A stretch of DNA of 64,000 nt from Ostrea edulis (Eukaryota). Positions 10,021 through 56,603 of the stretch are shown one piece after another; the stretch's first letter is position 1, and the number at the start of each line of letters is the position of its first letter. The stretch is from the NCBI RefSeq assembly GCF_947568905.1, contig NC_079171.1:40610001-40674000 (forward strand), read 5' to 3'. Made by a program: the position numbers and the translations under genes. Under the pieces are notes generated by a model, which was not told the origin of the DNA, did not search any database, and worked only from the letters and a program-made list of their open reading frames with translations.

Positions 10021-12663
10021 ACATATATTCGTTACACTACCTCTAATTCGCTGAAATGCCATTGCGGTTTCTGAATGGCACCAATCAAATTATCCGAGCA
10101 TACTAACTAAATACAACGACATTTTGACTGGTTTGCTTACGGATGATGAGTAGACAACGATATTAGCTGTGGGTATCCGACGATGGGGATTCACATACGT
10201 ACTAGAAATTGTTGGTAGCTACACGAACCCAATTATTTTCAGAAGAAAAATGTACAAATGCTGTAATAACTGAATCGATATTTTTGGGGATCCACATGTG
10301 AGCATACCAATTTGCGATTTTGGGTTTCTAAAATCAATCATTCAAACGTATATGTCTCTTTCGGCTAAAGAAATTCACAAAAGCTAATTAATTCCGTTTG
10401 ATGCAATGTTTAGTTGGTGTTAGTATCTATTTTCTGACTAAAATATCTAAGTACGAGGCAGACGTGGAAGCCTCTGTGGTGTCTTTATTTCGAGTTCACT
10501 GAGATATAGGCCTATTCGAAAACGTGAGCTATCTCTCTTTGTATTCTAACATTTAGTGTGAATATGACAAGTTCCGGGTAGCAACACAATCAGACTGCAC
10601 AATATGTTAAGTATTATGTTGAGAATCCAGGATGGTGTTCAAAATTGAAAACAGTTCAAACCATTTGTATGAGGGGTAAGAAAATGCTAATGAAAACAAA
10701 GTTCTTTGATCGAGTCAGGGGTGTGGGGTTTTTTTTTTGGGGGGGGTGCAGACTTTTAAAAATCGAATTGGGAATCAGACACTCACTTCTTTACAAATAT
10801 CTTCTAACGACTGGTATGATCATTTTGTACGAAATCAGAACAGAACTACTGAATATCAAAAGATGATGGCAATTCATCAGCTCAAAGCTCGTTTTTTTTT
10901 TGCAAGGATCGAAACGTGTCATGATCTTGAATATAATGGTACCCCCACCCCCTCCAACGAAAATCCTCCAAATTATGTAAAGTAAGAAACCAATGCTCTC
11001 ACTGGTTTACCAGGGCTAAAATTATTCCATCACTACCATCCGACTTTTTGGAAACTTAACCAGATTGCAATATTTGGCTAACTCACTTCAAAGTAACTAG
11101 ACGTATCAACGCTGTGTGCAAATCATTTGTACATGTGCAGCATTCAGCTGGGATTGTTGGTCTCAACTGATATATTCAAAATGCAGTAAAATAGGTAATT
11201 ATATCCAAATAAATTTACATTTGTTAATTATTGCTTGATTGATATAAATTATTTTTCCAATGTGGTCTGGGGAGGGGTAGGGGGTACTTGCCACTCTCAG
11301 ATGTACTCTTTGAGGGATAGGTAGGTTTTAACATCGAATATGATGCTTTTGACGTCTCTGTATTTTCCCTCTTTTTATTCGGTTGAGTCCCCTTGAGATG
11401 TTTTATTATGTAGGCGTGTACTGTGTCATAACAGAAGGATTCACCTTTTGCCACAAATTCACAAAATAATGTGATTTAAAACTCCAAATATTTTACCCCA
11501 AAATGGCTGAATTTACAGGTACATACTCCTGCCGACTTATTTATACCGCGTATTACTATTCAGGGGCTTCAATTTTAATTATTTTATTTTCAAAACATTG
11601 CATGTGTAAATGTCAGTTTAAAGATGAGTTGTGACGATAAAGAATTTGTTTATACTTGTATTTGAAACTGTATTTGTGAGTAATCAGTTGGGAATCTGTC
11701 ATTTGCCTCTCATTTACAAGCACAGGCTACGTTAGATTGTACTCGCCAATCGAAGGAGGTGGACATTTCCAGAATTCAGATGTGTCAGTCTGACATACCT
11801 AGACGTACATAGTGTCAGAACTTTTATTACTGCATGTACTACATTGATACTGAACAAGCAACCTTTGATATTCTATTATAAACCTGCCTGTGTTAAAACA
11901 CGGGGTCCTAAGTTAAGAGTAAAGGTCCTGAGGAAATTTGTGCAATATATGATATATATACTAACTTCAATCATAAAACACGTGAAATCCTGGAACGGGT
12001 TAGTTAGAATAATCTGACTGTGTCTCGGGACAGGCTCTTCGTAGCAATCCACATCACTTTAACGATAAAACGTTCTATTGGATGGGATGGGGGTTGTCCT
12101 CCTGTATTTACAATATCAATTTTCTATTATTTTTACATGCAAAGCTTATTTTTTCACGTGTATGAAGGAAACCTATGTATTGTGATTTTTTTTACTAACG
12201 TGAACATATTTGTTGGCGTGATTGCTGTAAGATTATGCAGCAATATCTTTGCAGCCGTCTGCACTATTGGTAATGACCCTTTTCGAGCAGTACTTTCCAG
12301 ATCAAGGAAAGATAGCTCATGTTTTTGGATTGGCCTATATCGAATTGATGTAAAAATGAAAATGATGATTGTTAACAGATGTAATATCATCGGTGTATCT
12401 TAATTACTGTGATAAAATTTAGAAATCATTTCAAAAGTAAGGATTATCTCCCTCATACATAGCTCTGATCCTTAGACGAATTTGGCTTCAGTCTTTGACA
12501 CAGATTTTCCTATTAGTTCTTACAAGTTTATTGTTATATCGGATTTCCAAAATTTCGGCTTCAGCATATGTTGTCGAAATCCTTATGGATAAAATGGAAT
12601 ATTTTAGGGAATTGGAATGTGTATAGGGAAGTTGATTACGAAAATCATTGATATTCATTTCAG

Positions 12664-12824
12664 ACAACAAATGGATAGAGACATAATTAAGAAATACCAA
12701 GCAATTGACTCCCCCAGTTCCAGGAAAGGTAGGATGGCACTATAACATGACAATGAGAACGTGAACAGTGATTACCAAGAATAGGGACAATTTAGTCCAT
12801 CTTCAACCTGACTCCATTCATTAA
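12664..12824 (+). pseudogene. Orphan, inactivated last (cytoplasmic-tail) exon of an upstream paralog
   Basis: Aligns with 34564-34720: acceptor TTTCAG, then QQMDRDIIKKYQAIDSPSSRK..NVNSDYQE* versus [30 protein letters not shown]. It has in-frame stops, and no TM or EGF exons are recognisable upstream. Confidence 0.75.
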
Positions 12825-13567
12825 ACGATTTTCATATAGGGCCCAAATTGTTTTGAATAGTGTAACGGTATTATCGATGTCAAGTTCGAAAAGTATTTGG
12901 CAGGTTCCACATAGGGGAATTAATAAAATATGTTGATGCATATGAATAGCAATTCTGGATCATTGATCCAATGCGCATTTCAATTCAACTTTATTCAGAT
13001 GAAATGAAATTACTTTTTTTTTTTTTTTTTTTAGAACAGACTAATTGTGAATTAAACCCAGTTATTGTGTACGTGACTAAATGTTTAAATGTTTAAACTG
13101 TCGACAATAGCAGGCAACGTACCATCTTGACTTAAAGTCAGGTTTTAAGATTCTAGCTACATGAAACATATGTTACACACATTTTGGCTGCGAGAAGGGG
13201 GATATGAATATCTTGCAACTCTATGTACTTGTCTGTACAAGGACACCATGGATGTTCCCAATGTCTTGCGCAGTTTAGGTAAGCGGATCTAAGTTGATAA
13301 TGTATAGATTTTTAAAGGGATCCAATGCAGTGATACAGAGCTATACATAATTATTTTCATTCACCTCTCCTTTGGGCTATCATCTTAAATTTCTACTGAT
13401 CAATTAGTAATTTACTGCCCTTTAAACCAGTAGATATGAAGACGACTAGCCCAAATTCGATATTTGATAATAATGAAACGTTTCCGTGATTCGGCCTAAT
13501 ATTATGTTTATTCAAACTGGAATCAACACCATGTTTGAAAAACGTCGTCATTGTACTATTCTCATTC

Positions 13568-24250: not shown

Positions 24251-27200
24251 TTGTATAACATGCTAAATTCGTTTATTTCACGTTTAATGGATGTTGAGTA
24301 TGGTTTTTTTTCTTCTGTTTGATGCCCCCCTTTTGGGATGCTTCATCTTAGTATGTTTCCTTATTATCATTGTATTGTGTGGGATTTTCCGATCAGACAA
24401 ACTTAGATGATGTAAGATTTTGTTTAGGGCCCCGTGCTTAGCTTATTATATGGATGACCATTCACAGCGCGCCGTTCCTTTCCGTTTTCTTGGAGTGCAA
24501 AGACTGCTCATGTGATTTTGTGTACACAAAAAAAAAAATATTTTATTCCCATCATCCACCTTCCACATCCTCCGTTGTAATGCCTGCTTTATTTGGCCTA
24601 TTTCCTTTGTAAAACCCACCTTATTTGATCGCAGGCAGCTCTATTTCGATATTTCATTATGTGTTGTAGGGGGTCAGATTGCATAATCATACCTATGTGA
24701 TACATATGTTCTTGTATTTTTGTTTTCGATTCATTCTGACCCCCACTAGCTCATTCTGTTATATCACTTCGTCCATCGTCAACTTCCCATATTTATGTAG
24801 CAGTATTCCATTATCACCTGTTTATGGTGTTAATATCTCTAAACTGGTTGGATACGCCAGAGGTTGTCATGTGTATTATCAGTTTTTAGATAGAAGCAGG
24901 CTACTGACAAACTGACGATATAGGGGTTTCAACATTTCCACAGTTTCGTTTAAAGTCAGCATTTTGCAAATCCTATGGTTGTTATAACAATCTTGTTTCC
25001 CAATGCAACCTATCATCGGGTCAAATGCTGTCGGCCTTGTTTCATACCGATTATCAAGCCGTTCTTTGCACACTGATTTTGACTACGGACGACTCCGTTT
25101 ATCTGATCAATATATAGGTGTGACCGGTCGACAGGTGATGCTCACTCATCCTAGACATGTTATCCCGCCTTTGGTATATCCAGGGATATGTGTTTGCCCA
25201 ACTGTATATTATGTATTGCTTATATGAGTTATGAGATTGATCACTGTTCGTCATCTTCATCTTTCATGTGGGAGGAGAGAATATTTTATAAGATTTGAAG
25301 AGGTTCGAACCTGAGATTTGGAGTAAAGTCAAATTTTTGGGAATTTTATTTTTGATTTCTACATTGAATAAGAATTGGGAAATTAAAAAGAAAAAACGGG
25401 GTCGTAATGCTTGTTATTGAGCTTTATTGTTCTAAATGTGGCCTTTTTGCACTTAAAATTGACTCGAGATTTATTCAATTTAACTTGATTTGTCTGTTGG
25501 GGTCAACACAACATAAGCAACAGAAATCAGTCATTACATAAAATAGATACATAATCATGTCTTAAAACAATACAGATAAAAAATAATACTATCAATGGTA
25601 ATAAGTAATGACCTTTTTTGCGCTTGAAATACGAAACATCATGGTATCAATGTTTCTGAGTTTAAAACGACATATTAGGAGTAATGTCAGTTTCTTAAAT
25701 TTCACATAATTTTCAAGGCATTGCACAAAAAGATTGAACTGAAAGAAGGTTGGTGTTGGAGATCAAATGTTTGAATGATTAGCGACAACAATGAATTTTT
25801 ACATAAAACTTCGAGTAAATTAAACTAAACTTTTTTAATCATCGGTGTTCTGTTTGAAATAAAAATCACTCAAATTAATCAATTACAACATTTGAACTTG
25901 TTCCAAGTCTCAACAACTTTTAGCATAAATTATAAAACTAAAGTACACATATCCAATTATAAATGGATGAAACAGCAACTGTAATATCATGCAGATTTAG
26001 AACTGTTTGATTAATCAATCCTTCCGCCGCAAAATATAATCCCTGCCAAAGCCTTTCAAAATTTGAATTGGCACAAAAAAATTCAACTAGATCGGGTCCA
26101 TTAATTGATGTGTAATATGTTTGCACCAATTGAATAAGTTTTGAAGCAGTAAATTCTTAGTTGTATTATCCGGTGGAGTTGTGCTCAAAGGGCCAGGAGC
26201 CAACTTCCTTAGCACATCTCAAGATACGACCATATTGACACCACCCAAGGACATAAATCCCTAACCCAAGCATTCAGTTTTTCTCACACATATCTGAGAG
26301 TGGAAAAGAACATTTTTCAAAGATACTTTTACATGAGATAACCATATTGGTCCCACCCTAAGACTTGAATACCTAACAAGGTGTCATGTATTTTTGTACG
26401 CGTCGTGTGATTGGTTCGCAAAGACATAGCTTAGTCTCGGGGTCATCCGAATGGTTTCAGGATTATTTGCAGACCAATGACATGACACATTATAAATTCG
26501 TACTCTGTAACCTCCTTTTTGGCTGTCAGTGGAAGGGATGAAGCCCTCTCCGATCAATGCACGCACGATTGTGTCAAATAAAGATATTAGATGGGTTTTG
26601 AGTTGAAGAGACTTGTAGTATGACATCTTCCTGACCTGCCGCTCGCCACAATTCCTTAGGTAACGCTGTGATTACTTGGAAAATGTGCCCGGAAAGAGGG
26701 ACCCCCTGCTTTTTTACAATTTTCTGTTTCATACCTTGTGTATTTTATTATTCCGGTAGAGGGCCAATCTCTAAAGCTTACAAAAAGCGTGACACGATTA
26801 CATGAATGAAAAGAGGGGTTAGATAGACTTGGAATTCACACATTTCAGAGAAAGTATTGCCACCAAAAATATCCAAAACGGGGAGGAGTAGAAATATCCA
26901 TACTTTAGGTGCCTGTGCGAAAGTATGCTTGTTAAAACTATAAAATTATGTTAATAGTGCATACACCTTTCAAGTGACATATTCTCTTACATATTTATCA
27001 TCTACACTTATGATACACAGCGCCATATCTTCGTGTTGTATTGTGTTTTTTGATTTGTAGATGCCTCTCCTTCTCTTTAATTTGAATGTCCGAAACACAG
27101 TCACCTAATCCCTCCTCTAGTGTGGTCATGTGCATGTGTTTGTCTAGCTCTTAATATTGCATTGTATTCTTTATAGGGATTATGACACTGATCACTGATC

Positions 27201-30200
27201 GTTTTTTCCACTGTTTCATTAGAATATAGATATAATCTATTGTTAAATCTGTTGAACTTTTAATTCGCATACTGGAGATCAAACTGACAACCCTACAATG
27301 GGGTATAACAATATATAACAGTTTCTAGAGTAGAAAGTAGAAAAAGATCTTCTTAAATTGGTTACTGCGTTATATAATGAATTGTTCCTAGTGTACATAG
27401 TGGATGTAATAATATTCAAGAAAAGATTAAATTATACTTCCCTTAACAGAAATAGCGTCTCGGAGTACGATTTTGATCCAAGAATTTCCACCCAATTCCT
27501 TATTTCGAGGGAAATACATCCACTAGACTGTGAACATGTAGTGTAATAAGCGAGAGTATACACATCTAAGCTAACGAACCCCACTAGTCCATAATTGTTG
27601 TCCACTTCTGTATCTGCACTTGATTTGTGAACGGCAATGAGTTTTATCGTGACTGATGTATAAATACACTATACATGCAAGTTTTTCCATTCTTCACGAT
27701 ATAATTCATAGTAATATAATACTTCAACAATACCATTACTAATTTCACTTTATTCCTGATAAAATGTTGCTCTATCATTTACAAAGAATATCAAGATCAC
27801 GAATACAAGTTTAATTAAGAGCTAGAGGTGAACAATGTTGATTTCGTATAAACATTATTCATTATATTCGATATGGTCACAATGTACGATTATTTTAGAT
27901 ATATAAGGAATGAATAACATTTCGTTTTTAGCGTCGTGTATTTAACCGAGTTTTACTGTAACGTGCCCTTGAGGAAACCGTATAACTGAAGATTAAATGT
28001 ATGCCTTTGTATATGTGATCATCGAATATTTGTTTTCATTTTCTACAGAAAACATTGCCCTCAACAAACCGGCATGGCAACTTCATCAATATGGAGAGGA
28101 CGCCAAATCCGATGCGAGTAATGCTGTAGATGGACTCAAATCTGACCTTCGCGCCTGGGGAGGACAGTGTATCGTATCGGCTAATTATCAACAGATAACC
28201 ACATGGAGAGTGGACCTAGAGGACATCCTCAGTATACATCACATTACCATTCATTACAGGACGGACAATGCTGCATGGGGTTTGTTGTTTCTACATTTTA
28301 CATATTCCACGAGATGTAACTTGATATTAAAGTAGGAATTTCCGCTATTTTGTTATAAACATTGAAATCATCGTATATGTATTATTGATATTTCAGGTGA
28401 AGAAAATCACTATACTAGAAGATTTTTGGGGTTTTCGTTATATGTATCAAACACAACCGACAGAACAGAGGGAGAATTGTGTTTCCACGACACAAACTAC
28501 ACAAGAGACACCATACCCGCCATCCTCAACGTCACGTGTCCAGTTCACGGGCAATACGTCATTTACTACAACGAAAGACTACCTGGAGTTACCTACCCTG
28601 ATGGTTATAGTGCCCATGCATTTAATGAACTCTGTGAAGTAGAGGTTTATGGTATGTTTGAATACTTTACGATTTCATTGAGATATAACTAGTACATGTT
28701 GATTAAACTGTAATTAGTGACCACTAATTACAGTTTAATACGAAGACAGATGCAGCTTTGCATGTAAAAAATGTTGTGTGCCTAAATTCATAATTAAGTA
28801 TTTGGGCATTTTATTTTCAATAAACGTTGAATTAATGATTTTCGTTTCTGTCTTGTGTACGAAGAAGTTTTATTAACATTTTAAATTTTAGTTTTAAAAA
28901 AAATCTTAAATATGCATATAATGGTTAAAATTAGTTCTGAAACAATATAGTTTTCTATATTACATATGAGCCCTATTTTCTTCAAACAAATCTACATTTG
29001 GTTTTTAATGTTGATATAATTAAACAGTCTCCTAATTTTTATCAAATAGCAAAATTTTACTGTCCGGCTCAACATCAAATTCACTCAGTTCGTTTGAACG
29101 TAAATGTATAAAACAAAATAAAATATTTTCAAAAGAAACATATACATTCTGTATTTTCAATACTAATTGTTTTAGATATTATTATTTGTAATTAACACAA
29201 TGCAAGCTATCATTTCGTCAAATGCTGTCTGACGTGTTTCATACCGATTGTTAGACCTTTTTAAAATGGTGTTTACGGTTCTTTGCTTTTGATTTTGTCA
29301 ATACCCCCATACACTTTAAAAATGATACATGAGTGTGTGGTCTTTAAGTGTTTAATAAATGCGTCTCTTTATTTTAAAGGATGTCCCAGCTCTGGGTTTT
29401 ACGGAGAAGGCTGTTCTCTCCCGTGTCCAGATATCAACTGTAGATATTGTAACATAGAGACGGGGGCGTGTCAGGGGTGTAAACCTGGATACAAAGGTCA
29501 CCGATGTGAACAAGGTATGGTATTACCGAGAAATAAATGTATAGTGTCATCCAAATATTATAAATATTATAGTCGCGTATCTGTGCAAACACTGTATTGT
29601 AAGTCGTTGGTATTAATATGAAAACTTTTGAATTACGTACCTTAACGGATACACTTACATAAACTTCATTTTATATCATATAATGCAAATGAATCTTTTT
29701 TACAAAATGTCTGGAAGCAAAAACGCAGCAATATTATATAAAGAATAACTACTTGCTCATATATATTGATAAAAGAAAAACTAAACCAAATTTCGTTAAT
29801 ATTGCTAGTGGGATAATTCTCGACGAAAAGGTGGTAAACAGGGTTCCGTGAAAGCCCTATTTTACCGTTTGTTTTGGCACTTCAAACTTATTATGTAAAT
29901 ATGCTTAATTTTCACAATATCCACCTATATCTAATATATCTCTTAAGGAATAACACTTAAGAATTACTGATATTTGTTGTCGGAAACAAATCTCAATAAC
30001 TTAATACCAATAGCGATGGAGAAATGTTGCGATGTGTCAGGTTTGAATACGGGTGATCTGCTGGTTCAATCTATAAAACACCTCACCAGAGATTAAATAA
30101 GGTAGAGGTAAACTTTCGACCTGTTTTGTTTCATTTATTGTCTTCTTGTTACATTTGGCGCAACGACGGATTACTTGCAGCTGGAAAATGAAGCATTTTT

Positions 30201-32353
30201 CTTTGCATATTATGCTACTACCCATTAACTAATGATACTCGCTGTTTTTGTTTTGTTTTTGGTTTTTTTTTATCAAAGAAAAACTGGAGAACATGTACGA
30301 CATAATCAGGCTGAATTACATAATCATATGGAATGGTACACTAATTGTGTTGACTTTTGTGTTGTTTTTGGAAGAATGTGATGCCAAAAAGTATGGTGAA
30401 GGTTGTCAGTATGAATGTGGGAAATGTAAAGACATGGAACAGTGTCATCATAAAAACGGGATGTGTTTAAAGGGATGTGAGCCAGGTTTCAAGGAAGGAA
30501 AATGTGTAGAACGTAAGTAATAGTATGCTCTCTACAAATAATGCTGGACGAAATTTTGTTTTGTACTAAGTTTTTGACTTTATGTTCTTCATAAGCATCG
30601 ATTTAGTTTTAGTTTTACTTCTAAGTGTGCAGGTGTAGAGAAACTTTTCTAAAAGTATGCTTATCTTCACAACATAATCATAGCGTCACCTTTGAGAAAG
30701 TTTTTCCCCGAGGGTCATAGAAAACACAAGTTTTTCCTTAAGGATGGATAGTTATATAGGTTTTTTGTAAATAATTAGTCAATGTTTACACCACCCAATA
30801 GGGTTCCGAAAATACAGGAGTCCTTATAGTTTATGTAATTGATGTCCCTTTTATTCCTAAGATACAAATGGGAACAAAAATATGGTAACGCAGGAGGGAC
30901 GCAGACTTATAACACCTAAAATATACATAAATGATTGACTATTAAAGCTGCACATAAATTACTTTTAATCTTTTTGCAAATATTTCACTCCCATGTTGTG
31001 ATAAGGATAGGGTTATGTATTTCGTATGAAATACATTTTCTTTCATTCTCAAATATCAAGTCTTTGATACTTAGGGAGCCAGGCTTTGTACAATGTACTG
31101 TTGAAGGAAAACGTTACTATTGCTTTTTTTAACAGAATGTGACAGTCGCAAATATGGCGTGAAATGCCAACAGAGTTGTGGATACTGTTTAAATTTCGAA
31201 CAGTGTCATCATATTAATGGGACATGTTTGAATGGATGTGATCCGGGACACCAGGGATTAACCTGTAACGAAAGTAAGTTAGCGCCATTCATCATGGACA
31301 TTGTCTGCTGTAAGATTATATTCGCTATAAGATTCTTTATCATTATCGTTTGTTTTACAGTATTTGTACAACTTCACTGTAATGTGAAGTTGAAGTTCAC
31401 TGCAATTGCAATGTGGTTTTATAAAACAAACAAAAATCATATAAAATGTTTACCCTCCTCTGATTTCATAGAGGGGGGGGGGGTCTTCCTTTGAACAAGT
31501 CACACGATGTGCGTTGTATTTTCCATTTCCCATGATAAACTAAGAATGAACATATACATGTAATAGTAATGTGCACAGCTAATTCCTAGACATCTTGGAT
31601 GTGAAAAGGTCACTGTTATGAAGCAGTGACGTTGTGTATGGAGATGATGGTGCATGTGAAGGCAATGTGTTTCAATGAACGTAATATACGTAATTCTATG
31701 GATGTATCAGCTCAGTGTGTGCAAATCAAGAAAAGTGTTTTTTCGTGGAAATTAAAATGTAACTAGGCCTACATATATGTACTATCTTCAGTTTTCTCTT
31801 ATTTCCAAGCTTTAAACCAACAGTTGTACATCTATCTATTCAACAGTAAATCGTTTGTTCGTCAGTAAATAAGCAATGAGTTGTTGCATATGCAACTGCT
31901 AAGTATGAAAAAGTCCAAACTTTTCAATGAAAAAACCCAATTGATGACGTCTCTGATTTTTGAACAACTGACATAGTCATTGAATTCAGTTAACCAATCA
32001 TCTAATAAACCCTGTCAATAATTAATAATTGAAAGTAGGGCAAACTCGGTCTTCATGAAAAACAAAAAGTAGAATCACGTGTGTAGAAGGAGCAAGCACC
32101 TCCAATCGCCTGGACACACAGTAGTAAAGTAATCAGCATGTAAAAGCGGCCTAATATTGGTATGGAATACATCAGGTATGTTGTAGGAGTAAACATCACC
32201 TTTTGGTGGGTCACACCTGGCTTTTATTCTCTATCCTGGTCATGTGACCGCAGTGATCCGTATTAAAAAGACGTTTGTAAGTAATTAAGTAAAGGTGTAA
32301 CAAATGGAATGAAGCACAGTAGACGGAATCCATTGTGGACATAAGTTATATTT

Positions 32354-32407
<54 letters not shown>

Positions 32408-34720
32408 CTAAAACAACAAACGACACCTGTATAATTAGAACATTTTATACATCATAAGTTTCATACATGTAAGTTACTCCGGTTGTAAAGAATGCAAACA
32501 TGTAGTATATAATGTGCCTGTATTAAATGCTAAGATAAAACAAAAATATTTACCCCATGTTTTGTAATTGTAGCATGTCGAGTTGGGTTTTATGGAATGA
32601 ATTGCCTAAAAAGATGCAATAAAAACTGTGGAATTCCAGAACGATGTAACAGAACATCCGGGGAATGTGAGGGAGGCTGCCAACCTAGATGGAGAGGGCT
32701 TCTGTGTGATACAAGTAATGTTTTGTGTAAAATACACATTTTCTGACAATGACTATAGCCAGTGATTATTTTTTTTATGTAGTAAAAGATACATGAATAT
32801 TGGATAATTGTCCACCGCGTTTTATAACAGTAGTAGTGAATAAGACGAAAGTAAGATGGAATGTTTTGCAATAAAATATGTAAACAATAACTGTAAGAAG
32901 ACTGTCTCCTCCAATTTTGAAGATTTCGCTAAACAACATTGGCAATTTTTTTTATATATACTTATCAATCGTCTTATGGATGCTCCCCACTGAAAAGCAA
33001 TGATTCGTGACTGTAATGTACTGTAATTCATTCCATTACAACAAGGATTGCTGATAACATGTACTTACCTGATTGGAATGTAATATCTCACAATAGAGTG
33101 CAGTGATGATCTGTACGGACCAGATTGTAATCAAACATGTGGTAAATGTCGGGAGGGGAAACCGTGTCATCATTTTAACGGTTCCTGTAATGATGGATGT
33201 GAGCCTGGATACCGGGGAAACAAATGTGATAAGGGTAACATTTACCTGTGCTGAAGTACAAGATCCACATATAAATTAACCATATTTCATAAGGTAAACA
33301 AATTCAAACTTTTCCTGCATTTTAATTCAATTTTCACATTAGAGTGTATCGATAATCTGTATGGGCCGGACTGTAAACAAGCATGCGGGGAATGTCGGGA
33401 CGGCAAGCAGTGTCATCACATCAGCGGTTCATGTAATGATGAATGCGAACCTGGATACCGGGGCAACAAATGTGATGAGGGTAACATTGATGTGTGATGA
33501 AGCGTGGCTACAGAAATACGAAAAATGACTACATGTATATGCTTTGGTTCTGCGTTCAGAAACTAATTAAATATAAATGTATTGTAGTATGCGACTTTGG
33601 TCATTTTGGTGTTAGTTGCCGAGAGGAATGCAGCATATTCTGTCAGAAATCACGTGATTGTCATCATGTGACGGGCAATTGTACAGGTGGCTGCAAAAGT
33701 GGATGGCATGGAAAGGACTGTTTAGAAGGTTGGTATACATACAGTCATAACAGAAAGGTGAAAATAACGAACAGTTTTCTCATAACTCTTATAAGCAATA
33801 AAAAATAGAGACAAACATGGGAAATGATCAGGTGCCTAGGAGGAGTAAGCATCCCCCGAAGACCGGTCACACTCGCCGTGAACCCTCTATCTTGATGAAG
33901 TAAACGAATTTATCCGTAGTCAAAATATGTGTGCGAAGAACGGCCTAATACATCATTTGACCCGATGATAGGTTGTATTGGAGAACTAGGTCGTTCTAAC
34001 GACCAACGAAATGGCAAGATGGTTATTCTAATTGAGACAGTTGAAACCCATGCATCATCAACTTGTTTGTCAGTAGCCTGCTTCAATTCAAAAACTGGTC
34101 ACACACAGAACTAGCTCTTACATATCCAATCAGAGAAATATACATACCATATGCAAGTGGAATTGGAATATTGCTACATACAGCTGGGAGGTCGACGATA
34201 TATAAGCTGAAATCATCCCGTTTGTCACAAAGTTGAGTTGTTAGTTTGCCGGTTATATCTATTTTCAATAATATATCCAAGTATGAAGCAAATGTGGACG
34301 ACTCTGTTAAATTCTGTTTTCTGTTATGTACAGATATGATGTTTTACTGCATACATCCTTAATTACAGTGGATAATCAAGTACAGAAAATAATGTTTTAC
34401 GGAGTCCTTGGTGCCTTCTGTGTTACGCTCGTTCTAGTTGCTGTGCTAGTGTGTGTTCTTTATAACATCTCGAAACGGTAAGTCACCTTTTCAGAGACAT
34501 CAAGTGTTTTTCACATACAAAGTAAGCAGGTCTCTTTTTTCGAGAATGGCATATCATTTTCAGACACCAAGTGGATAGATATTTCATCAAGAAATACCTA
34601 GCGAGTGACACCCCCAGTTCTAGGAGGACTCAAGACCATGGCGAGGAGGATCTCAACAGTGCATATCAAGAATTGGAAGTACGGGGTTTCTCATCATCGC
34701 TCTATGACTCCATTTATTAA
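15290..34720 (+). CDS. Paralog A: F-type lectin-like/EGF-repeat type I transmembrane receptor (MEGF10/SREC/Draper-like architecture), complete 12-exon model, ~590 aa
   Basis: GT-AG exons read by hand: 15290-15341 (signal [17 protein letters not shown]; alternative ATG 15275); 28049-28279 and 28397-28651 (lectin: [60 protein letters not shown]); seven EGF exons 29380-29514, 30375-30512, 31136-31273, 32574-32714, 33097-33234, 33343-33480, 33588-33728; TM exon 34369-34477 ([23 protein letters not shown]); last exon 34564-34720 (..[21 protein letters not shown]). Total 1773 nt, phases consistent, no internal stop. Confidence 0.9.
15560..16950 (-). mobile_element. Old LINE (CR1/L2-like) 3' relic in intron 1 of paralog A
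   Basis: Broken frame [26 protein letters not shown] resembles the RT C-terminal KYLG..LD region. A similar relic is at ~39740-40100 (-) in intron 1 of paralog B. Confidence 0.35.
18043..19031. mobile_element. ~1-kb non-autonomous DNA element with ~25-bp imperfect TIRs, intron 1 of paralog A
   Basis: Left end cgggtatgttaagacaggtcatg and right end cataacctgccttaacgtacccgc are inverted repeats; reverse-complement homolog at 40738-41757. Confidence 0.7.
19100..19445 (-). mobile_element. ~350-nt hammerhead-bearing dispersed repeat (Penelope pseudo-LTR or retrozyme-like unit), longest copy
   Basis: Runs from aaaactt.tacggtacc to gaggcctcgacccaggggt. Homologous copies at ~14612-14890 and ~62075-62175, and an opposite-orientation copy lacking the ribozyme core at ~12385-12575. 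Confidence 0.7.
19124..19172 (-). ncRNA. Hammerhead ribozyme copy with core mutation
   Basis: Same sequence as 62099-62147, but CUGAAGA is CUGAAAA (G8A), with further changes in helix I and II. Confidence 0.65.
19596..21175 (-). mobile_element. 5'-truncated Penelope-like retroelement with C-terminal RT (Naiad-type organisation), frameshifted
   Basis: ORFs 20475-21005 and 19925-20518: [77 protein letters not shown]. The frame ends shortly after the RT thumb (..FHTDC*) with no downstream GIY-YIG. Confidence 0.85.
21230..21475 (+). mobile_element. Inverted fragment of the same Penelope-like family, head-to-head with the main copy
   Basis: + strand reads [47 protein letters not shown]. It overlaps in content with [20 protein letters not shown] on the - strand at ~21100-21170. 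Confidence 0.7.
22285..23296. mobile_element. Tc1/mariner-pogo-type non-autonomous element (MITE) nested in a Penelope-like 3' tail
   Basis: TA|CAGTAAAATAT ... ATATTTTACTG|TA (11-bp perfect TIR, TA duplication). Removing it rejoins aagcaatacaaaaTAgatagttggacaaac, the retroelement tail sequence. Confidence 0.85.
24203..24246. repeat. (TA)n microsatellite
   Basis: About 22 perfect units. Confidence 0.95.
24760..25267 (+). mobile_element. 3' fragment of the Penelope-like element
   Basis: [19 protein letters not shown].. followed by the same 3' tail, ending gatcactgttcgtcatcttcatctttcat. Confidence 0.8.
32359..32403. repeat. (CT)n microsatellite in intron 6 of paralog A
   Basis: About 22 perfect units. 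Confidence 0.95.
33805..34310 (-). mobile_element. 3' fragment of the Penelope-like element in intron 10 of paralog A
   Basis: ORF 34083-34280 [24 protein letters not shown].. plus the shared tail. Confidence 0.8.
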
Positions 34721-35731
34721 ACAACTGTTCCTTTGGATTCCATACAGAGCTAACACTGCTTAGAATAGCATTTATCTATATCAGAATATTAAGATGCGCA
34801 GTAATATCCACAGAACATCAATATGATTTTAAAAGAAAATCCATAAGAATCAGACCCTAACTTTATCCAATGCTTCTCCCATAAAGTGATTTAGAGAACA
34901 ATGATGGTAACACGATTTTCATGATAAATAACATTGCACAAAAATCACTGTTCCTCAATATTCTGAAGTAGTTGTATAGCAACCATCAGAAATGCACATC
35001 AGCCCTTACGCTTAATGAAACAAACATATACAAGATGTATGGTTGATGGCGCAGCAACTCCCATGCTGAATGCAGCACGTTTCCTTGCTTTATGGTATTT
35101 TTGTGCAGACCCTTTTTGTCACAATTAGTGTTTTGTCATGTGTACATATTGTATTGACGGGCTCTTTTGTATCATGTTGTGTAGCCAACCTGTTTTACAC
35201 TCTAACTTTGTAGTTATTAGTCAATTTTCTGATGTAAGCCCAGTCAATTAATTGTGATGTAAGATTATATACTTTGCAGTTGTTGGTTCTAGTCAGCACT
35301 TAGTTTTATCAAATGACAAATTGTATTCTTTCTTATTCCTTTCCGTTGTAATGTACAGAACAATAGTGGAAATTGTTTTGTGTACATTTTTGGGAACAAA
35401 CGTTTATTGGTGCAATGTGTTGCTATGTATTCACATTTTGTAAGTTTCGTATGCTTTAATGTAGCTTAATTTGCAATTATCGCTAACTTCCCCTGTAATG
35501 CCTCTTAAAACTGACCACTATACGATGTCATTGACCAATCAAAATACTCGATTCGCCATGATATATTGAATTCATTTTTGGACATTTTATTCGTATGCCA
35601 CGAACATTTCCAACAGCAACCATTTCTTTTCACTCTGTTTACTTTGCTTCACTACATATTTGTGGATATTTGTGTACAAGTATTTTGTATGCCTTTTCAT
35701 GCACCACCTGCATCTATTCAGTGACATCATG

Positions 35732-51500: not shown

Positions 51501-54500
51501 ACATCACATACTTTTCACAATTAATCTTCATCAAAATAAAAAAAACACACCATAAAACTAAGATTGTGACATCATGAACATTCCACCGCATGTTCCAATT
51601 AGTAATATACCTTAAATTTCAGACACGGCATCTCTTTGATGTCTAAGGATAACGTCGAAATCTTAATAACGGATATCCGACCACGACAAGCGTTGTAATT
51701 TTAAAATATCATCACTACTACGGCCTTGACTGAGTGCTAAACAAATGTTAGCATTTGTTGTGTGTCACGTATAAAAAGCAAATGATATAGAAAACAAAGT
51801 TCACAGCAGGTGTGACCGGTCAAAAGGGGCTGCTTGCTCATCTTAGTCAGCTAATCCCACCTCCGGTGTGTTGAGGGTTCCTTGTTTTCGTTACCCTGAT
51901 CTTTGTATCCTTTATATAATTTCGGCGTATGGAGAAAAAAGTGCCACCATGTGACTATCAGATTTTAAACATCATACCAATGAGACGGTACATAAGAAAT
52001 GGAGCTTGTGAAACCCTAGTAAACGCCGTCGTAACATCTACATTTGATTATGGAAACTGTCTATATTTTGGAGTTGGAAGAAATTGGACCGGCTGCAACG
52101 GGTGCAGAATACTGCTCCTCGTCTAGTTACGAGGTCGTCGATTCGGAACACATATTTCCAATTCTGGTGAAAACTCAATTGGTTTCCACTTCATTGCCGA
52201 CCCCAAATCAAGATTTTGCCTTATACATATCGTTCCTCTCCAGGATCTTGGCTGTCATACAGTTTTTGAAATGAATACAAGCCATGTTGACCATTACGTT
52301 TAGAATCGAAGTCGCAACTTTTGGTTTCAAATGTCAGGTCAAAAAACCCTGGTAAACATATCTTGAAATAAAAAAAAAAACAAAAACAAAAACAAAATCA
52401 AAAAAAAAAAAAAATATTCGCTATCGATCTTATTACAATTATTCATTTCGATGATTTTAGGGATATATAAAATTGTATGTCATATTTTCATTTAATTTCA
52501 TTTAATTGTGTTTCATCGTTGTACAGTAAAACTCGAATATAGCGAACACGGATATAGCGAAATTACGGCTATAGCAAAAGTGAAAACGATTTCCCCGGCA
52601 AATTCTTTATATATTCTATATAAAAAGCGCGTCTATAACGAACACGGATATAGCGAATTTACGGATATAACGAAGTAAATTCCTATTCCCCTTGAATTAA
52701 AAATGAACGTAAAATCACCTTTTATAACGAATTTATTTTTTTCATTTTAAACTCTCTGTGATTTTTAACAATTGTTTTCCATTGACATAAAGGATCCACA
52801 CTTATTACAAAATTTCTGTTTGTATTTTTTCAAAAAAGGTTGTTAACGCAAAACAATACTTACACATACATTTAGGAAATATTTTGTCGGTATTATTTAC
52901 TATTCTCGTTAATTAAATTTGAAGTTTGATTGCATTTATTTTATCGAACACTCCTTTATTTGTGTAAAGCAACAAGTAAATTACAATTGCAATAGACTGT
53001 ACATGTGTGTATTTCGCAAAATGTTGTTGACATTTCTCTCTCGACATGTTCTTGCATGACTTAATAATCCATCAAGATAAATTATCATATATAAATCAAT
53101 GTGTATATTTCTTGTATAGAAATATTTCTTCTCGAAAATATATAGGCTTCATTTCTCTTAAAGACGATACAAACGCAAGTATATCGATTGCTGCTTTCTT
53201 ATATAACTGGTATATATGTAGAACAAATCAGTTTTATAACGAATTCGTTGTATTTTATTTATGAATTCGCTATAAACGTATAGCGAATTACGCTTATAGC
53301 GTTTTTGTAGAGGGTCCCCAGAAATTCGCTATATCAGAGTTTTACTGTGTTCCTCTTCGTACCCTGGTAAACCGAGTGTTTAGAGCATTGCGCTCAATAT
53401 CACACGGCCTCTCACCTTTATCGGCGCTGGTTCGAATCCCGCTCGCGCCAGTAAGTGAGAAAGTTCCCCAGTTACTTTCGGAAGGTCAGTGGTCTCTTCT
53501 CAGTTACATTGTATCTGAGTTCTCTCTTCCACCAATAAAATAACTGAAAAAGTGTTGAATGTGGCTACAGCATCAATCAATCAATCAATCAATCAACCGT
53601 AAAGCACCTTGGAGTAATTTATTTTTTGTATGGTGATATGTAAATTTCATTGTTATTATGATGAGTTTGTTCACTATTCAGTATCTTCCTTTCTTCAATC
53701 ATAATAATCAACATTTGAAATACGTGTTGCATTTGATCAGAAAGCCACCGTGGAAAACGTAGCACCATAGTTATCATCAAAACCATAAATGACACTTCAA
53801 TAGAGACATTCATCCGCTCTAATTCACCTCCACACTGTTCCGGTTTTTTTTCGTGCAAACCGATCATGCGTCAACCCGTGTAAACCATTTATCGCTCTTT
53901 GCAACCGTTCATCGTTCTGTTTAATTCATCAAGTGTTTCGTGTAAAGCATTCAACGTCAACTGTAAACTGCTTCATGCAATAGTTCCCCGTAATAGTCCT
54001 TTCGTTCAAGTGAAATATTCAAGCTACGTCCATGAAAATGTGCAGACCAAGCAACACCCCCTAACAAGAAATTACAGATCGTACCTTTACTATTTTATGT
54101 ATCTAAATGCATTTTCACGATGTGCGTATTTCTCTGAGAAAAATTCATAGAAAGAAAGAGCATTCATACCGTCTTATTGAATCATGATATCTAATGATCA
54201 ATACATTATGTTTGATCTGCACACGATTATTACGCAACAAAAAGGATAAAGTTTAGACTTTGATAGCCAGTCTTGTGCCGCTTTCCGAAACTCAATGTAG
54301 ATCCGTGTTATCATTGGCGTAACTAAGTTGAACTAACTTACGCAACAGTCTATGTTTTTTTTCTTCAGAAAACGGATGCAGAATTCAATTTGTAGAAATT
54401 TTCTAAGGCAATATTTTCCCAATAATATGTTTCCGTGGACTCAATATTCAATATTGAATGGTACGTTTATTTATTTTAAAGGATGTCCCAGTCCTGGATA

Positions 54501-55170
54501 TTATGGAACAGATTGTTCCCTCTCGTGTCCAGATGTCAACTGTAAATATTGTCACATAGAGACGGGGGCGTGTCAGGGATGTAACCCTGGGTACAAAGGT
54601 TATCGATGTGAACAAGGTATGATATTGTTTTCCAATGAATGTTTCGTGTCGTCCAAATTTGACAGTTACGAATCCGTGGAAATAATGTTTGGTAAACTAT
54701 TGGCTTAACATCTAAAGGACTACTTCATATTTTCCACACAAAACCCTAACTTTGATAACGCATACACGTTAAACTTTCGTTATGTTTCACTGCATATATT
54801 GTCTTCTTGTTATATGTACGTCTGGTGCAATGACAAGGAATATATGCAGCAATAAAAGCGAACTTTTCTATTTGTTTCTAGATTATTTTACGTTTCGCTA
54901 ACTAATCATATTCGTCATTATTGTTTTCTATCAATGAAACACTTGATAACATGTACTGCTTAATTATGCTGAACTACTTTCACACTATGCGGAACGATAT
55001 GCTATTTGTGTTAATTTTTTTTTAATTGGAAGAATGTGACGGCAGAAAGTATGGTGAAGGATGTCAGTATGAATGTGGGAAATGTAAAGACATGGTACAG
55101 TGTCATCACATAAACGGGACATGTTTAAACGAATGTGAACCAGGTTTCAAGGAAGGACGATGTGTAGAAC
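39515..55170 (+). CDS. Paralog B of the same receptor family, 5' part (signal, lectin domain, two EGF repeats); 3' end not found in window
   Basis: Exons 39515-39569 ([18 protein letters not shown]), 44245-44478 ([19 protein letters not shown]), 44700-44954 ([25 protein letters not shown]), 54482-54616 ([34 protein letters not shown]..), 55033-55170 ([18 protein letters not shown]..). All GT-AG, in frame, and collinear with exons 1-5 of paralog A. Confidence 0.85.
40455..40640 (+). mobile_element. 3' tail of the Penelope-like element in intron 1 of paralog B
   Basis: Near-identical to the reverse complement of 19596-19790. More decayed tails occur at ~32070-32330, ~42560-42770 and ~51800-51930, and an RT sliver at ~10440-10520. 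Confidence 0.8.
40738..41757. mobile_element. Second copy of the ~1-kb TIR element, intron 1 of paralog B, opposite orientation
   Basis: Collinear reverse complement of 18043-19031; ends gcgggtacgttgagacaggtta and tgacctgttttaacatacccgc. Confidence 0.7.
45171..45981. mobile_element. Tc1/pogo-type MITE, copy 1 (intron 3 of paralog B)
   Basis: Starts TA|CAGTAAAACT and ends TTTACTG, with subterminal tatagcgaa/ttcgctata repeats; ~810 bp. Confidence 0.8.
47560..48088. mobile_element. hAT-type MITE (~530 bp)
   Basis: TIRs CAGGACTAGGGT / ACCTTAGACCTG (10 of 12 match), dense subterminal gtaatg/cattac repeats, and flanking 8-mers gacagaat/gatataac that may be a decayed TSD (5 of 8). Confidence 0.55.
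49100..49560 (-). pseudogene. Possible hAT transposase N-terminal (TTF-type zinc finger) relic
   Basis: A stop-riddled frame contains [30 protein letters not shown], resembling the CxxC..GFxNWK pattern; short match only. Confidence 0.35.
52524..53347. mobile_element. Tc1/pogo-type MITE, copy 2, inverted relative to copy 1
   Basis: TA|CAGTAAAACTC ... GAGTTTTACTG. The internal sequence is the reverse-complement homolog of 45171-45981. Confidence 0.8.
53361..53596 (+). mobile_element. tRNA-derived SINE family 1, near full length
   Basis: ggttcgaatcccgctcgcgccagtaagtgagaaagttcc.. and a (CAAT)n tail. Truncated copies at ~23950-24081 (+) and ~56690-56771 (-). Confidence 0.8.
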
Positions 55171-55629
55171 GTAAGTAGCGATACATATATATGCGTTTTA
55201 CAAATAATGTTTGAAAAATATCGTTTTGCACTTCGCTACGTCGGGCAATAATTCAACATTTTCAGCTAAATTTGGAGAGAGTCGCCCAAGAAATAAGAAT
55301 AATCATAAGTAGTTATTCAGGCATAGTATCTTTGTTTCTTGGAAGTAATGTGATGATTGGTGAAGAATGATTTCAACCCGGAATTTTCCTCATTTCAATA
55401 AGATTAAAAGTAGATTGTTTTAATTGATATCCTTTTGTTCAGGTATCTCACCAGCTTTGATAAAATTCCTCACGAATAGAATGGCTCGAATCTCGAGTCT
55501 ATTTCCACTCTTCTGAAAAAAAACCCACTTACAAATCTTATCATCTGATCTCAGCACATACAGTAAAATGGACATGTTTTTATATCAAAGACCACGAACG
55601 CATAGAGAAAATCATAGTGCTTCTCTACA

Positions 55630-55962
55630 CCACTGCGGTGGCCTAGAGGTTAGAGAATTCGCCCTGCATGTGGAAGACCGGGGTTCAAATCGCGGTCGCG
55701 ACAGACCTTATTCGTTAAAACAGGTAGTTCCATAGCCAAACACTCAGCATCAGGTGTGAATATTACGGGTCTTCAGAAATGACCTTAAAAGCGGACATCC
55801 CGTGTCACAGTAGACATGGCATGCTTAAGAACCTTCACTCCTCAATGGATGTAAGCGACGAGCATACTATTAGGCCTAAAGTCACCGGTCTTGGTGACGT
55901 CTCTCTATGAGTGAAAGATTCTCGAGAGTGACTTTAAACAAGACACAATCAATCAATCAATC
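55630..55962 (+). mobile_element. tRNA-derived SINE family 2, full length
   Basis: gcggtggcctagaggttagag (A-box), ggggttcaaatc (B-box), central cccgtgtcacagtag..aagaacc, (CAAT)n tail. Partial copy at ~38735-38950. Confidence 0.8.
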
Positions 55963-56369
55963 TTGGGAAATGTAATTATAAGTAAGAGTGAATAGATATA
56001 CATTCTCTTAGAATACTAGGTAAGCACAGTACAAGTGCATATAGCAGGTGGCATCTAGTATGTCATCAACGTACATTATTGGAAACGCATACGATATGCT
56101 TCTGCCAATTAAAGAACAAACTTAAAACACTTAACAAATGCAATGTGATTAATGATTAATTAATCTAGTACAGTGTTGTAATACCAAGCCATGTGCATTG
56201 GCAGTCATTACCACAAACGCAAAAATCGCAAAGGGAATTTTGATTGCAAACTCTGAAACAAATTCAATTCTCCTGTTTTATTGGTTGTTGGTTTCTCTGT
56301 TTTATTTATTTGAAATTATTAACTATTTCACACTAATATTCATAAAGTTTTCGTTCTGTTTTTATATAG

Positions 56370-56603
56370 AAAACATAGCCTTACACAAACCAGCATGGCA
56401 ACGTAGTCAATTCATCCCAGGTAACGCGATATTCAATGCAAGTAATGCTGTGGATGGACTGAAATCTGACCTCAGCGCCTGGGGAGGACAGTGTGTCATA
56501 TCGAATAGTAATCAACAAACAGCAACATGGAGAGTGAACCTAGAGGACATCCTCAGTATCCGTCACATTACCATTTATTACAGGACGGACAATACTGCAT
56601 GGG
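56370..56603 (+). CDS. Third copy of the first lectin-domain exon (second lectin module of paralog B, or exon 2 of a paralog C)
   Basis: AG at 56368-56369, GT at 56604-56605, 234 nt, phase 1-1, open: [78 protein letters not shown]. The partner exon (RFLGFSLY..) is not seen before 64000. Confidence 0.8.

What the first reader, a model, noticed from the sequence alone, without database searches (positions are those of the whole stretch)
34564..34720. 52-aa tail with SAYQEL-x7-SLYDSI: readable as two ITIMs or as one ITAM-like pair
Seen: ..[26 protein letters not shown]. Both motifs fit the ITIM consensus (S/I/V/L)xYxx(L/I/V). The YxxL-x9-YxxI spacing after an acidic patch also resembles a widely spaced ITAM; Draper has an x11 spacer. 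The TM segment has no charged residue, so no adaptor pairing is implied. The dead paralog exon keeps the first motif (SDYQE*). Inference: the receptor signals directly through SH2 proteins, and whether it activates or inhibits is open.
Basis: partly seen in the sequence, partly recalled or inferred. Interest (0 to 1): 0.7.

Follow-up and report, generated by a model that had tools for sequence, protein, structure and literature searches.

The report
Oyster lectin-EGF receptor tyrosine-motif tail
The last exon of an oyster gene for a cell-surface receptor encodes a short inner tail with two tyrosine motifs of the kind immune receptors signal through; the motifs are really there, but such tails are common and nothing here shows what they do.

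Summary
Window 34564-34720 (+) is the terminal coding exon of a 12-exon gene. Its acceptor and reading phase fit the donor of the transmembrane exon, and it encodes the quoted 52 residues up to a TAA stop.

The predicted protein has 597 aa. It has an F-type-lectin-like domain, seven 8-cysteine EGF repeats of the Tie2/SCARF1/MEGF type, an uncharged membrane helix and a 56-aa cytoplasmic tail.

Both motifs (SAYQEL and SLYDSI) fit the ITIM consensus. The YxxL-x9-YxxI spacing misses the canonical ITAM (x6-8) but fits the x6-12 definition used for Draper.

Chance alone gives two ITIM-like motifs in 1.5% of shuffles of this tail and in 0.3% of generic 52-mers, which is unremarkable on a genome scale.

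The only readable paralog is the dead orphan exon at 12658-12830. Its similarity to the live exon is confined to the exon, with dN/dS about 0.27. It keeps the NSxYQE block and the final DSI-x-stop block but lacks the second tyrosine.

I could retrieve no intact paralog or ortholog tail and no RNA evidence. SH2 signalling is therefore plausible, by analogy with Draper, MEGF10 and oyster ITIM receptors, but untested. AP-2 sorting signals and chance remain live rivals.

I rate it a new member of a known kind, of modest interest. The scan flagged at least six other ITIM-like tails elsewhere in this genome.

The parts
26683..26755 (+). Candidate first exon: ATG plus a hydrophobic signal-like peptide, ending in phase 1. 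Unverified.
   Evidence: Scan for ATG + hydrophobic stretch + phase-1 GT donor. It completes a 1794-nt CDS with a single terminal stop. There is no RNA or homology support.
28049..28279 (+). F-type-lectin-like domain, first exon (phase 1-1).
   Evidence: PDB 1k12 (eel fucolectin) E 9.7e-5. Pfam F5_F8_type_C_2 at 19.5 bits, below the 27.8 cut-off. Similarity to the copy at 56360-56605 starts exactly at the acceptor.
28397..28651 (+). F-type-lectin-like domain, second exon (phase 1-1).
   Evidence: Open frame with ag acceptor and gtatgt donor. No Pfam or PDB hit on its own.
29380..29514 (+). EGF repeat a.
30375..30512 (+). EGF repeat b.
31136..31273 (+). EGF repeat c.
32574..32714 (+). EGF repeat d.
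33097..33234 (+). EGF repeat e (tandem exon duplicate of f).
33343..33480 (+). EGF repeat f.
33588..33728 (+). EGF repeat g.
34369..34477 (+). Transmembrane exon: 25-residue uncharged helix, then NISK and two bases of an Arg codon. The donor is gtaagt.
34564..34720 (+). Tail exon (the finding): 52 residues. A basic juxtamembrane stretch, a Ser/Arg-rich linker, an acidic patch (EED), SAYQEL, a 7-residue linker, then SLYDSIY and the stop.
34664..34675 (+). Codons of YQEL, the first YxxL (Tyr 35 of the tail).
   Evidence: The tyrosine and flanking N, S, Q and E are identical in the dead paralog.
34703..34714 (+). Codons of YDSI, the second YxxI (Tyr 48 of the tail).
   Evidence: The Tyr codon falls in a 5-nt gap of the dead paralog, while the following DSI-x-stop block matches at 14 of 15 bases.
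12658..12830 (+). Dead, orphan paralog of the tail exon. The acceptor is kept. It has a 9-nt insertion with an in-frame TAA, TAG in place of the Leu of YQEL, and a 5-nt gap before DSI.
   Evidence: tblastn finds no EGF or TM exon upstream of it in the window.

Best explanation
The region is the real terminal coding exon of an oyster gene for a type I receptor. The ectodomain is an F-type-lectin-like domain followed by seven Tie2/SCARF1/MEGF-type EGF repeats. A single uncharged helix spans the membrane, and 56 residues lie in the cytoplasm.

I think the most likely function of the distal tail is phosphotyrosine docking. On ligand-driven clustering, a Src-family kinase would phosphorylate the tyrosine of YQEL and probably that of YDSI. 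The phosphorylated motifs would then recruit SH2 proteins directly, with no adaptor chain.

The tyrosines are 13 residues apart and follow an acidic patch. That geometry suits a tandem-SH2 reader of the Syk/Shark type (ITAM-like, as in Draper and MEGF10) slightly better than the usual widely spaced ITIM pair. Each motif alone is also a valid ITIM for SHP2 or SHIP, so the sign of the signal stays open.

Shown: the gene model, the topology logic, the motif matches, and purifying selection on the proximal tail including the first motif block. Inferred: phosphorylation, SH2 recruitment and any downstream effect.
For: - The splice phase and consensus sites link the TM exon to the tail exon, and the 12-exon model gives one open 597-codon frame.
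- Basic residues follow the helix, and the disulfide-rich lectin and EGF domains precede it, so the tail is cytoplasmic.
- There are two ITIM-consensus matches and one x6-12 ITAM match, with 5 Tyr in 52 residues. Shuffles reach both features 0.25% of the time.
- Similarity to the dead copy is limited to the exon, from about 25 nt upstream of it to 5 nt past the stop. dS is about 1 and dN/dS about 0.27. The NSxYQE and DSI-x-stop blocks are kept while the linker between them is not.
- The EGF repeats match the Tie2 and SCARF1 structures.
- Literature: Draper's ITAM is defined as YxxI/L-x6-12-YxxI/L and binds Shark directly (PMC6219719). MEGF10's ITAM binds Syk, and Draper-II's ITIM binds Corkscrew (PMC8092387). 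An oyster receptor with two ITIMs binds SHIP2 (PMC11841013).
Against: - There is no RNA evidence. All sequencing runs found were DNA contigs.
- No intact paralog or ortholog tail could be retrieved, so conservation of the tyrosines is untested apart from one pseudogene.
- In that copy the second tyrosine is absent and the last tyrosine is His.
- phmmer against 1.84 billion cluster representatives found no homologous tail. So either this protein is not in the library with this tail, or its cluster representative carries a different tail.
- The canonical ITAM spacing (x6-8) is not met, and there is no NPxY.
- The dN/dS estimate rests on only 36 codons with near-saturated synonymous sites.
- ITIM-like matches are frequent.
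Confidence: 0.4

Rival explanations
1. The two motifs are tyrosine-based YxxΦ sorting signals. Unphosphorylated YQEL and YDSI would bind the mu2 subunit of AP-2 (or AP-1/AP-3) and drive clathrin-mediated uptake or lysosomal delivery of a lectin/scavenger-type receptor and its cargo. No SH2 signalling would be involved.
For: Both motifs fit YxxΦ, with Φ = L or I. The ectodomain (lectin-like plus SCARF1-type EGF repeats) is the kind found on endocytic scavenger receptors. The C-terminal position of YDSI and the upstream acidic patch are common in sorting signals (established knowledge of YxxΦ signals, such as TGN38 YQRL and LAMP1 YQTI). Conservation of the blocks fits this reading as well as it fits SH2 docking.
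Against: Nothing here separates it from the SH2 reading, and the two are not exclusive. The Ser at position -2 of both motifs and the paired spacing are not needed for AP-2 binding. In Draper, MEGF10 and Jedi-1 the equivalent motifs do signal (PMC8092387).
Confidence: 0.25
2. The motifs are chance matches in a fast-evolving, Tyr- and Ser-rich disordered tail. The tail matters only as a membrane anchor or stop-transfer segment, or for something unrelated such as Ser/Thr phosphorylation or a C-terminal S-x-Φ PDZ ligand (-SIY).
For: The short degenerate consensus gives at least one ITIM-like match in 8% of generic 52-mers and in 20% of shuffles of this tail. No homologous tail was detected in any database search. 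The second tyrosine is missing in the only other copy. Many similar flags were raised in the same genome.
Against: Two motifs plus ITAM-like spacing occur in only 0.25% of shuffles. dN/dS of about 0.27 and block-wise conservation centred on NSxYQE and the C-terminus argue for constraint on just these parts.
Confidence: 0.2
3. The gene, or this 3' end, is not functional: an unexpressed or decaying member of a tandemly duplicating family, or a gene whose transcripts use another terminal exon.
For: The neighbourhood holds decayed pieces: the orphan dead tail exon at 12658-12830 and a scrambled partial copy at 54484-56605. There is no RNA holder among the runs. The signal-peptide exon is unverified. 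The tail is not found in protein databases.
Against: All 11 downstream exons are open and in compatible phases, with ag/gt sites and a single terminal stop. The exon is present unchanged in an independent run (record 24).
Confidence: 0.1

Closest known systems
CED-1 / Draper / MEGF10 / Jedi-1 (PEAR1) engulfment receptors
   Same: Single-pass type I receptors with many 8-cysteine EGF-like repeats. They have an uncharged membrane helix and a tail that signals directly through tyrosine motifs: the Draper and MEGF10 ITAMs bind Shark and Syk, and the Draper-II ITIM binds Corkscrew (PMC8092387, PMC6219719). The x9 spacer fits the x6-12 ITAM definition used for Draper.
   Different: The identified exons contain no EMI domain; the N-terminal domain is F-type-lectin-like instead. 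The tail has no NPxY motif. It is 56 residues long, much shorter than those receptors' tails, and has 5 tyrosines against Draper's 13 (PMC6219719). No sequence similarity between the tails was detected.
SCARF1 / SREC-I (scavenger receptor class F) and the Tie2 EGF region
   Same: These are the best solved-structure matches to the EGF-repeat profile: Tie2 2gy5 at E 2e-13 and SCARF1 8hna at E 8e-10. SCARF1 is also a single-pass EGF-repeat receptor.
   Different: SCARF1 has a long Ser/Pro-rich tail and Tie2 has a kinase domain (established knowledge). This protein has only a short tail, and a lectin-like N-terminal domain.
Oyster ITIM receptors such as CgNCAM1
   Same: A bivalve haemocyte receptor with two cytoplasmic ITIMs that binds the SH2 phosphatase SHIP2 and dampens inflammatory signalling (PMC11841013).
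   Different: CgNCAM1 has an Ig/FN3 ectodomain and an unrelated tail sequence. Its function was tested, whereas here nothing has been.
Atypical ITAMs with long spacers, and hemITAMs
   Same: The spacer is longer than the canonical one, as in FcγRIIA (x12) and Draper (x11). This comparison is from established knowledge and was not tested here. A single acidic-patch YxxL, as in CLEC-2 and Dectin-1, would suffice if only the first motif is functional.
   Different: Here the acidic triad lies 5-7 residues before the tyrosine, not directly before it as in the DEDG-YxxL hemITAM.
F-type lectins (eel agglutinin 1k12 fold)
   Same: The N-terminal exon matches 1k12 at E 9.7e-5 over 71 residues.
   Different: The match is below Pfam thresholds. 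By eye, the His of the fucose-binding triad looks replaced, so sugar binding is uncertain. I did not test this.

Membership tests
ITIM-bearing receptor | Cytoplasmic (S/I/V/L)xYxx(I/V/L) motif | tested here: met
   Two matches, SAYQEL and SLYDSI, on the cytoplasmic side of the helix.
ITIM-bearing receptor | Tyrosine phosphorylation and recruitment of SHP-1/2 or SHIP through SH2 domains | not testable with these tools
   Needs biochemistry. SHIP2 recruitment by ITIMs is documented in an oyster only for another receptor (PMC11841013).
ITIM-bearing receptor | Motif tyrosines conserved in paralogs and orthologs | tested here: inconclusive
   Only one other copy could be read, and it is a pseudogene. 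The first motif is kept up to the Leu-to-stop change, and the second tyrosine lies in a 5-nt gap. No intact relatives were retrieved.
ITAM (canonical) | YxxL/I-x6-8-YxxL/I | tested here: not met
   The spacer is 9 residues.
ITAM (extended, as used for Draper) | YxxI/L-x6-12-YxxI/L | tested here: met
   definition from PMC6219719.
ITAM | Binding of a tandem-SH2 kinase (Syk, ZAP-70, Shark) to the doubly phosphorylated motif | not testable with these tools
   Needs biochemistry.
CED-1/Draper/MEGF10 | N-terminal EMI domain | tested here: not met
   The exons upstream of the EGF repeats match an F-type lectin and F5/8-type-C-like models. No EMI hit appeared in the Pfam scans. The first exon is unverified.
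CED-1/Draper/MEGF10 | Multiple 8-cysteine EGF-like repeats plus a single TM | tested here: met
   Seven repeats with invariant cysteines and one 25-residue helix.
CED-1/Draper/MEGF10 | NPxY motif in the tail for CED-6/GULP | tested here: not met
   There is no NP dipeptide in the tail.
Adaptor-dependent activating receptors (DAP12 / FcRγ type) | Charged residue in the membrane helix | tested here: not met
   No D, E, K, R or H in the helix.
YxxΦ sorting signal | Cytoplasmic Yxx[LIMFV], at least 7 residues from the membrane | tested here: met
   Two matches, about 38 and 51 residues after the helix. AP-2 binding is not testable here.

The most novel reading that the evidence does not exclude
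An oyster-specific family of lectin-EGF receptors, outside the CED-1/Draper/MEGF10 lineage (no EMI, no NPxY), carries its own ITAM-like pair with an x9 spacer that recruits a Syk-type kinase directly. On this reading, adaptor-free ITAM engulfment signalling would be a module repeatedly attached to pattern-recognition ectodomains in lophotrochozoans. Retention of the intron after the TM exon gives an immediate stop (the TAA inside the gtaagt donor) and would provide a tail-less decoy form.
Probability: 0.15. Interest if true: 0.5.

Novelty: new member of a known kind. Interest (0 to 1): 0.3.

Why it matters
If the motifs are functional, this receptor would be one more invertebrate pattern-recognition or scavenger receptor that signals on its own through tyrosine motifs. 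It would add to the case that ITAM/ITIM-type signalling predates vertebrate immunoreceptors and is reused on many ectodomains in bivalves, whose immune gene families are greatly expanded. By itself it does not open a new question. Tyrosine-motif tails on EGF-repeat receptors (Draper, MEGF10) and ITIM signalling in oysters are already documented. The practical value is as one entry in a genome-wide catalogue of oyster receptor tails, where conservation statistics could separate real motifs from chance.

Tried and rejected
**Searches for a homologous tail, all blank**
- phmmer of the tail against 1.84 billion representatives gave one hit, P0001. It is a bacterial repeat protein that scores by summing ten weak stretches, so I rejected it as spurious.
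- The word search with the tail sees only proteins of 28-89 aa; it found none.
- The word search with the last EGF exon sees 58-184 aa; it found none. So the database holds no fragment models of this gene's 3' end.
- Back-translated pattern scans with the tail found nothing in JGI metagenomes, GTDB genomes or IMG/VR.
- The ESM Atlas feature search gave no usable hit.
- The scan's own notes, searched by sequence, gave nothing.

**Why the full-length protein could not be used as a query**
The window has no stop-free reference longer than 129 aa and no ORF of 200 aa or more. The full-length 597-aa protein and its paralogs therefore could not be reached through the length window of the word search. 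I did not type the spliced protein. I considered padding an alignment with an unrelated long protein to shift the length window and rejected it as unsound. One word search was left unused.

**Reads**
I asked look-up of sequencing runs for kind 'any', and it returned only DNA holders. Read laying therefore gave no splice evidence.

**Readings considered and rejected**
- hemITAM: the acidic triad is not adjacent to the tyrosine.
- ITSM (TxYxxV/I): absent.
- NPxY/PTB docking: absent.
- Adaptor pairing: no charged residue in the helix.

**First exon**
The search for a signal-peptide exon gave only one plausible candidate, which is unverified.
Full report
**1. The observation**

- It begins right after a pyrimidine-rich acceptor (…ttttcag).
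- The exon upstream (34369-34477) encodes a hydrophobic helix and ends before a consensus gtaagt donor with two bases of a codon (CG).
- The first base of the tail exon (A) completes CGA = Arg, so the two exons join in frame.
- The frame then stays open for 51 more codons, to TAA at 34718-34720.
- The tail has tyrosines at positions 7, 12, 35, 48 and 52, counted from the split Arg.
- A pattern scan finds [SIVL]xYxx[LIV] twice (SAYQEL, SLYDSI) and YxxL-x9-YxxI once.
- The helix (25 residues starting IMFYG) has no charged residue, and the tail has no NPxY.

**2. The gene**

Upstream lie seven exons of 135-141 nt, each in phase 1-1 and each encoding one 8-cysteine EGF-like repeat. A profile of the repeats matches the EGF regions of Tie2 (2gy5, E 2e-13) and SCARF1 (8hna, E 8e-10) among solved structures. 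Pfam gives only sub-threshold laminin-, teneurin- and PEAR1-type EGF hits.

Two further phase 1-1 exons (28049-28279 and 28397-28651) encode a jelly-roll lectin-like domain. The first matches the eel F-type lectin 1k12 (E 9.7e-5) and, below threshold, F5/8-type-C models.

A candidate signal-peptide exon at 26683-26755 completes a 1794-nt coding sequence with one terminal stop, giving 597 aa. That first exon is unverified.

The disulfide-rich domains must lie outside the cell, and K/R/H residues follow the helix, so the tail is cytoplasmic. An AATAAA lies about 1 kb downstream of the stop.

The organism is an oyster: 'oyster metagenome' runs hold the stretch. Earlier notes of this scan name it the flat oyster; I did not verify this.

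**3. Is it more than chance?**

| Feature | Shuffles of this tail | Generic 52-mers |
|---|---|---|
| Two or more ITIM-like motifs | 1.5% | 0.34% |
| ITAM-like pair (x6-12) | 2.2% | 0.47% |
| Both together | 0.25% | not computed |

This is uncommon for a single tail. Among several thousand membrane-protein tails, however, such a case is expected by chance several times. The motif match alone therefore carries little weight.

**4. Comparative evidence**

The window holds one other copy of the tail exon, at 12658-12830. It is dead:
- a 9-nt insertion carries an in-frame TAA;
- TAG stands where the Leu of YQEL should be;
- a 5-nt gap precedes the last block.

It is also orphaned: tblastn finds no TM or EGF exon upstream of it.

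Similarity between the two copies is confined to the exon, from about 25 nt before the acceptor to 5 nt past the stop. Over 36 alignable codons, dS is about 1.06 and dN about 0.29, so dN/dS is about 0.27. This suggests the exon was under purifying selection in both lineages for most of their separation. The estimate rests on few codons and nearly saturated synonymous sites.

Conservation falls in blocks:
- DR..IKKY next to the membrane;
- D.PSSR;
- N-S-x-Y-Q-E, the first motif;
- the final GACTCCATT-yAT-TAA (DSI, then Tyr or His, then stop), 14 of 15 bases identical.

The linker between the two motifs is poorly conserved. The Tyr codon of YDSI lies in the 5-nt gap, so I cannot tell whether the ancestor had the second tyrosine.

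**5. What could not be obtained**

No intact paralog or ortholog tail was retrievable. The full-length protein could not be used as a query, because the window offers no stop-free reference longer than 129 aa.

The phmmer blank has a limited meaning. With 51 residues against 1.84 billion sequences, about 44 bits are needed, so tails less than roughly 50% identical would be missed. It does show that either this protein is not in the library with this tail, or its 50%-cluster representative has a different tail.

Laying contigs of four DNA runs showed:
- the tail exon is present unchanged in an independent run (record 24);
- at 80% likeness the tail bin has roughly single-copy depth, whereas the EGF-exon bins are 3-8 times deeper, so close paralogs share the EGF exons far more than the tail;
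- a second copy, about 88% alike, of the TM-exon-to-tail region is present in all four runs (records 8, 15, 16, 23, 32), but I could not read its letters.

There is no RNA evidence.

**6. Mechanism**

I commit, at 0.4, to phosphotyrosine docking. A Src-family kinase phosphorylates YQEL and probably YDSI on clustering, and SH2 proteins bind directly. The basis is:
- the motif matches;
- the constraint on the first motif block;
- the absence of an adaptor-pairing charge in the helix;
- the precedent of EGF-repeat receptors: the Draper ITAM binds Shark, the Draper-II ITIM binds Corkscrew, and the MEGF10 ITAM binds Syk (PMC6219719, PMC8092387);
- working ITIM-SHIP2 signalling in oyster haemocytes (PMC11841013).

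The 13-residue Tyr-to-Tyr distance lies between the canonical ITAM (10-12) and Draper (15). It is shorter than the typical spacing of paired ITIMs (established knowledge). I therefore lean slightly towards an ITAM-like reading, but the sign of the signal is open.

The rivals are:
- AP-2 YxxΦ sorting signals (0.25), which are not exclusive with SH2 docking and suit a lectin/scavenger ectodomain;
- chance motifs in a fast-evolving tail (0.2);
- a silent or decaying gene (0.1).

**7. Comparison with known families**

The protein works like, but is not a member of, CED-1/Draper/MEGF10: EMI and NPxY were tested and are absent. It is closest in repeat type to SCARF1 and Tie2, and it carries an F-type-lectin-like head. 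It is a new member of the known kind 'single-pass EGF-repeat receptor with a tyrosine-motif tail'.

**8. Verdict**

The functional inference is plausible but untested. Novelty and interest are modest.

Noticed in passing
window 54484-56605: A scrambled partial copy of the gene. Homologs of EGF exons a (54484-54615, 77% aa identity) and b (55029-55172, 79%) are followed by a homolog of the first lectin-like exon (56360-56605, 83% nt identity, similarity starting at the acceptor). I found no further EGF, TM or tail exons before the window ends. It may be a partial tandem duplicate followed by the start of another copy.
   Followed up: partly
window 33088-33256 and 33334-33502: EGF exons e and f are a tandem exon duplication: 169-nt units 246 nt apart, 81% nt and 76% aa identity.
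   Followed up: partly
window 29197-29393 and 33728-34318: Very high-copy repeat sequences sit in the introns directly abutting EGF exon a and EGF exon g; summed contig depth is 10^5-10^6. Many contigs join the two places on opposite strands, so inverted copies of one repeat family bracket the whole EGF-exon block.
   Followed up: no
window 34478-34481: If the last intron is retained, the reading frame stops at once, because the TAA inside the gtaagt donor is in frame after CGG. This would give a receptor with only a 6-residue tail. Whether this form is made is unknown.
   Followed up: no
window 34255-34833: Contigs about 85-88% alike covering the TM exon, the last intron and the tail exon are present in all four DNA runs, at depths near single copy. 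This is either a divergent haplotype or an unassembled paralog. Its sequence could not be read.
   Followed up: partly
window 32349-32410: A GA/TC dinucleotide microsatellite lies in the intron before EGF exon d. The reads tool skipped it as a repeat.
   Followed up: no
window 28049-28279: The lectin-like domain matches the eel fucolectin 1k12, but the position of the fucose-binding His appears to be occupied by another residue (judged by eye, from memory of the F-type motif). Fucose binding may be lost.
   Followed up: no
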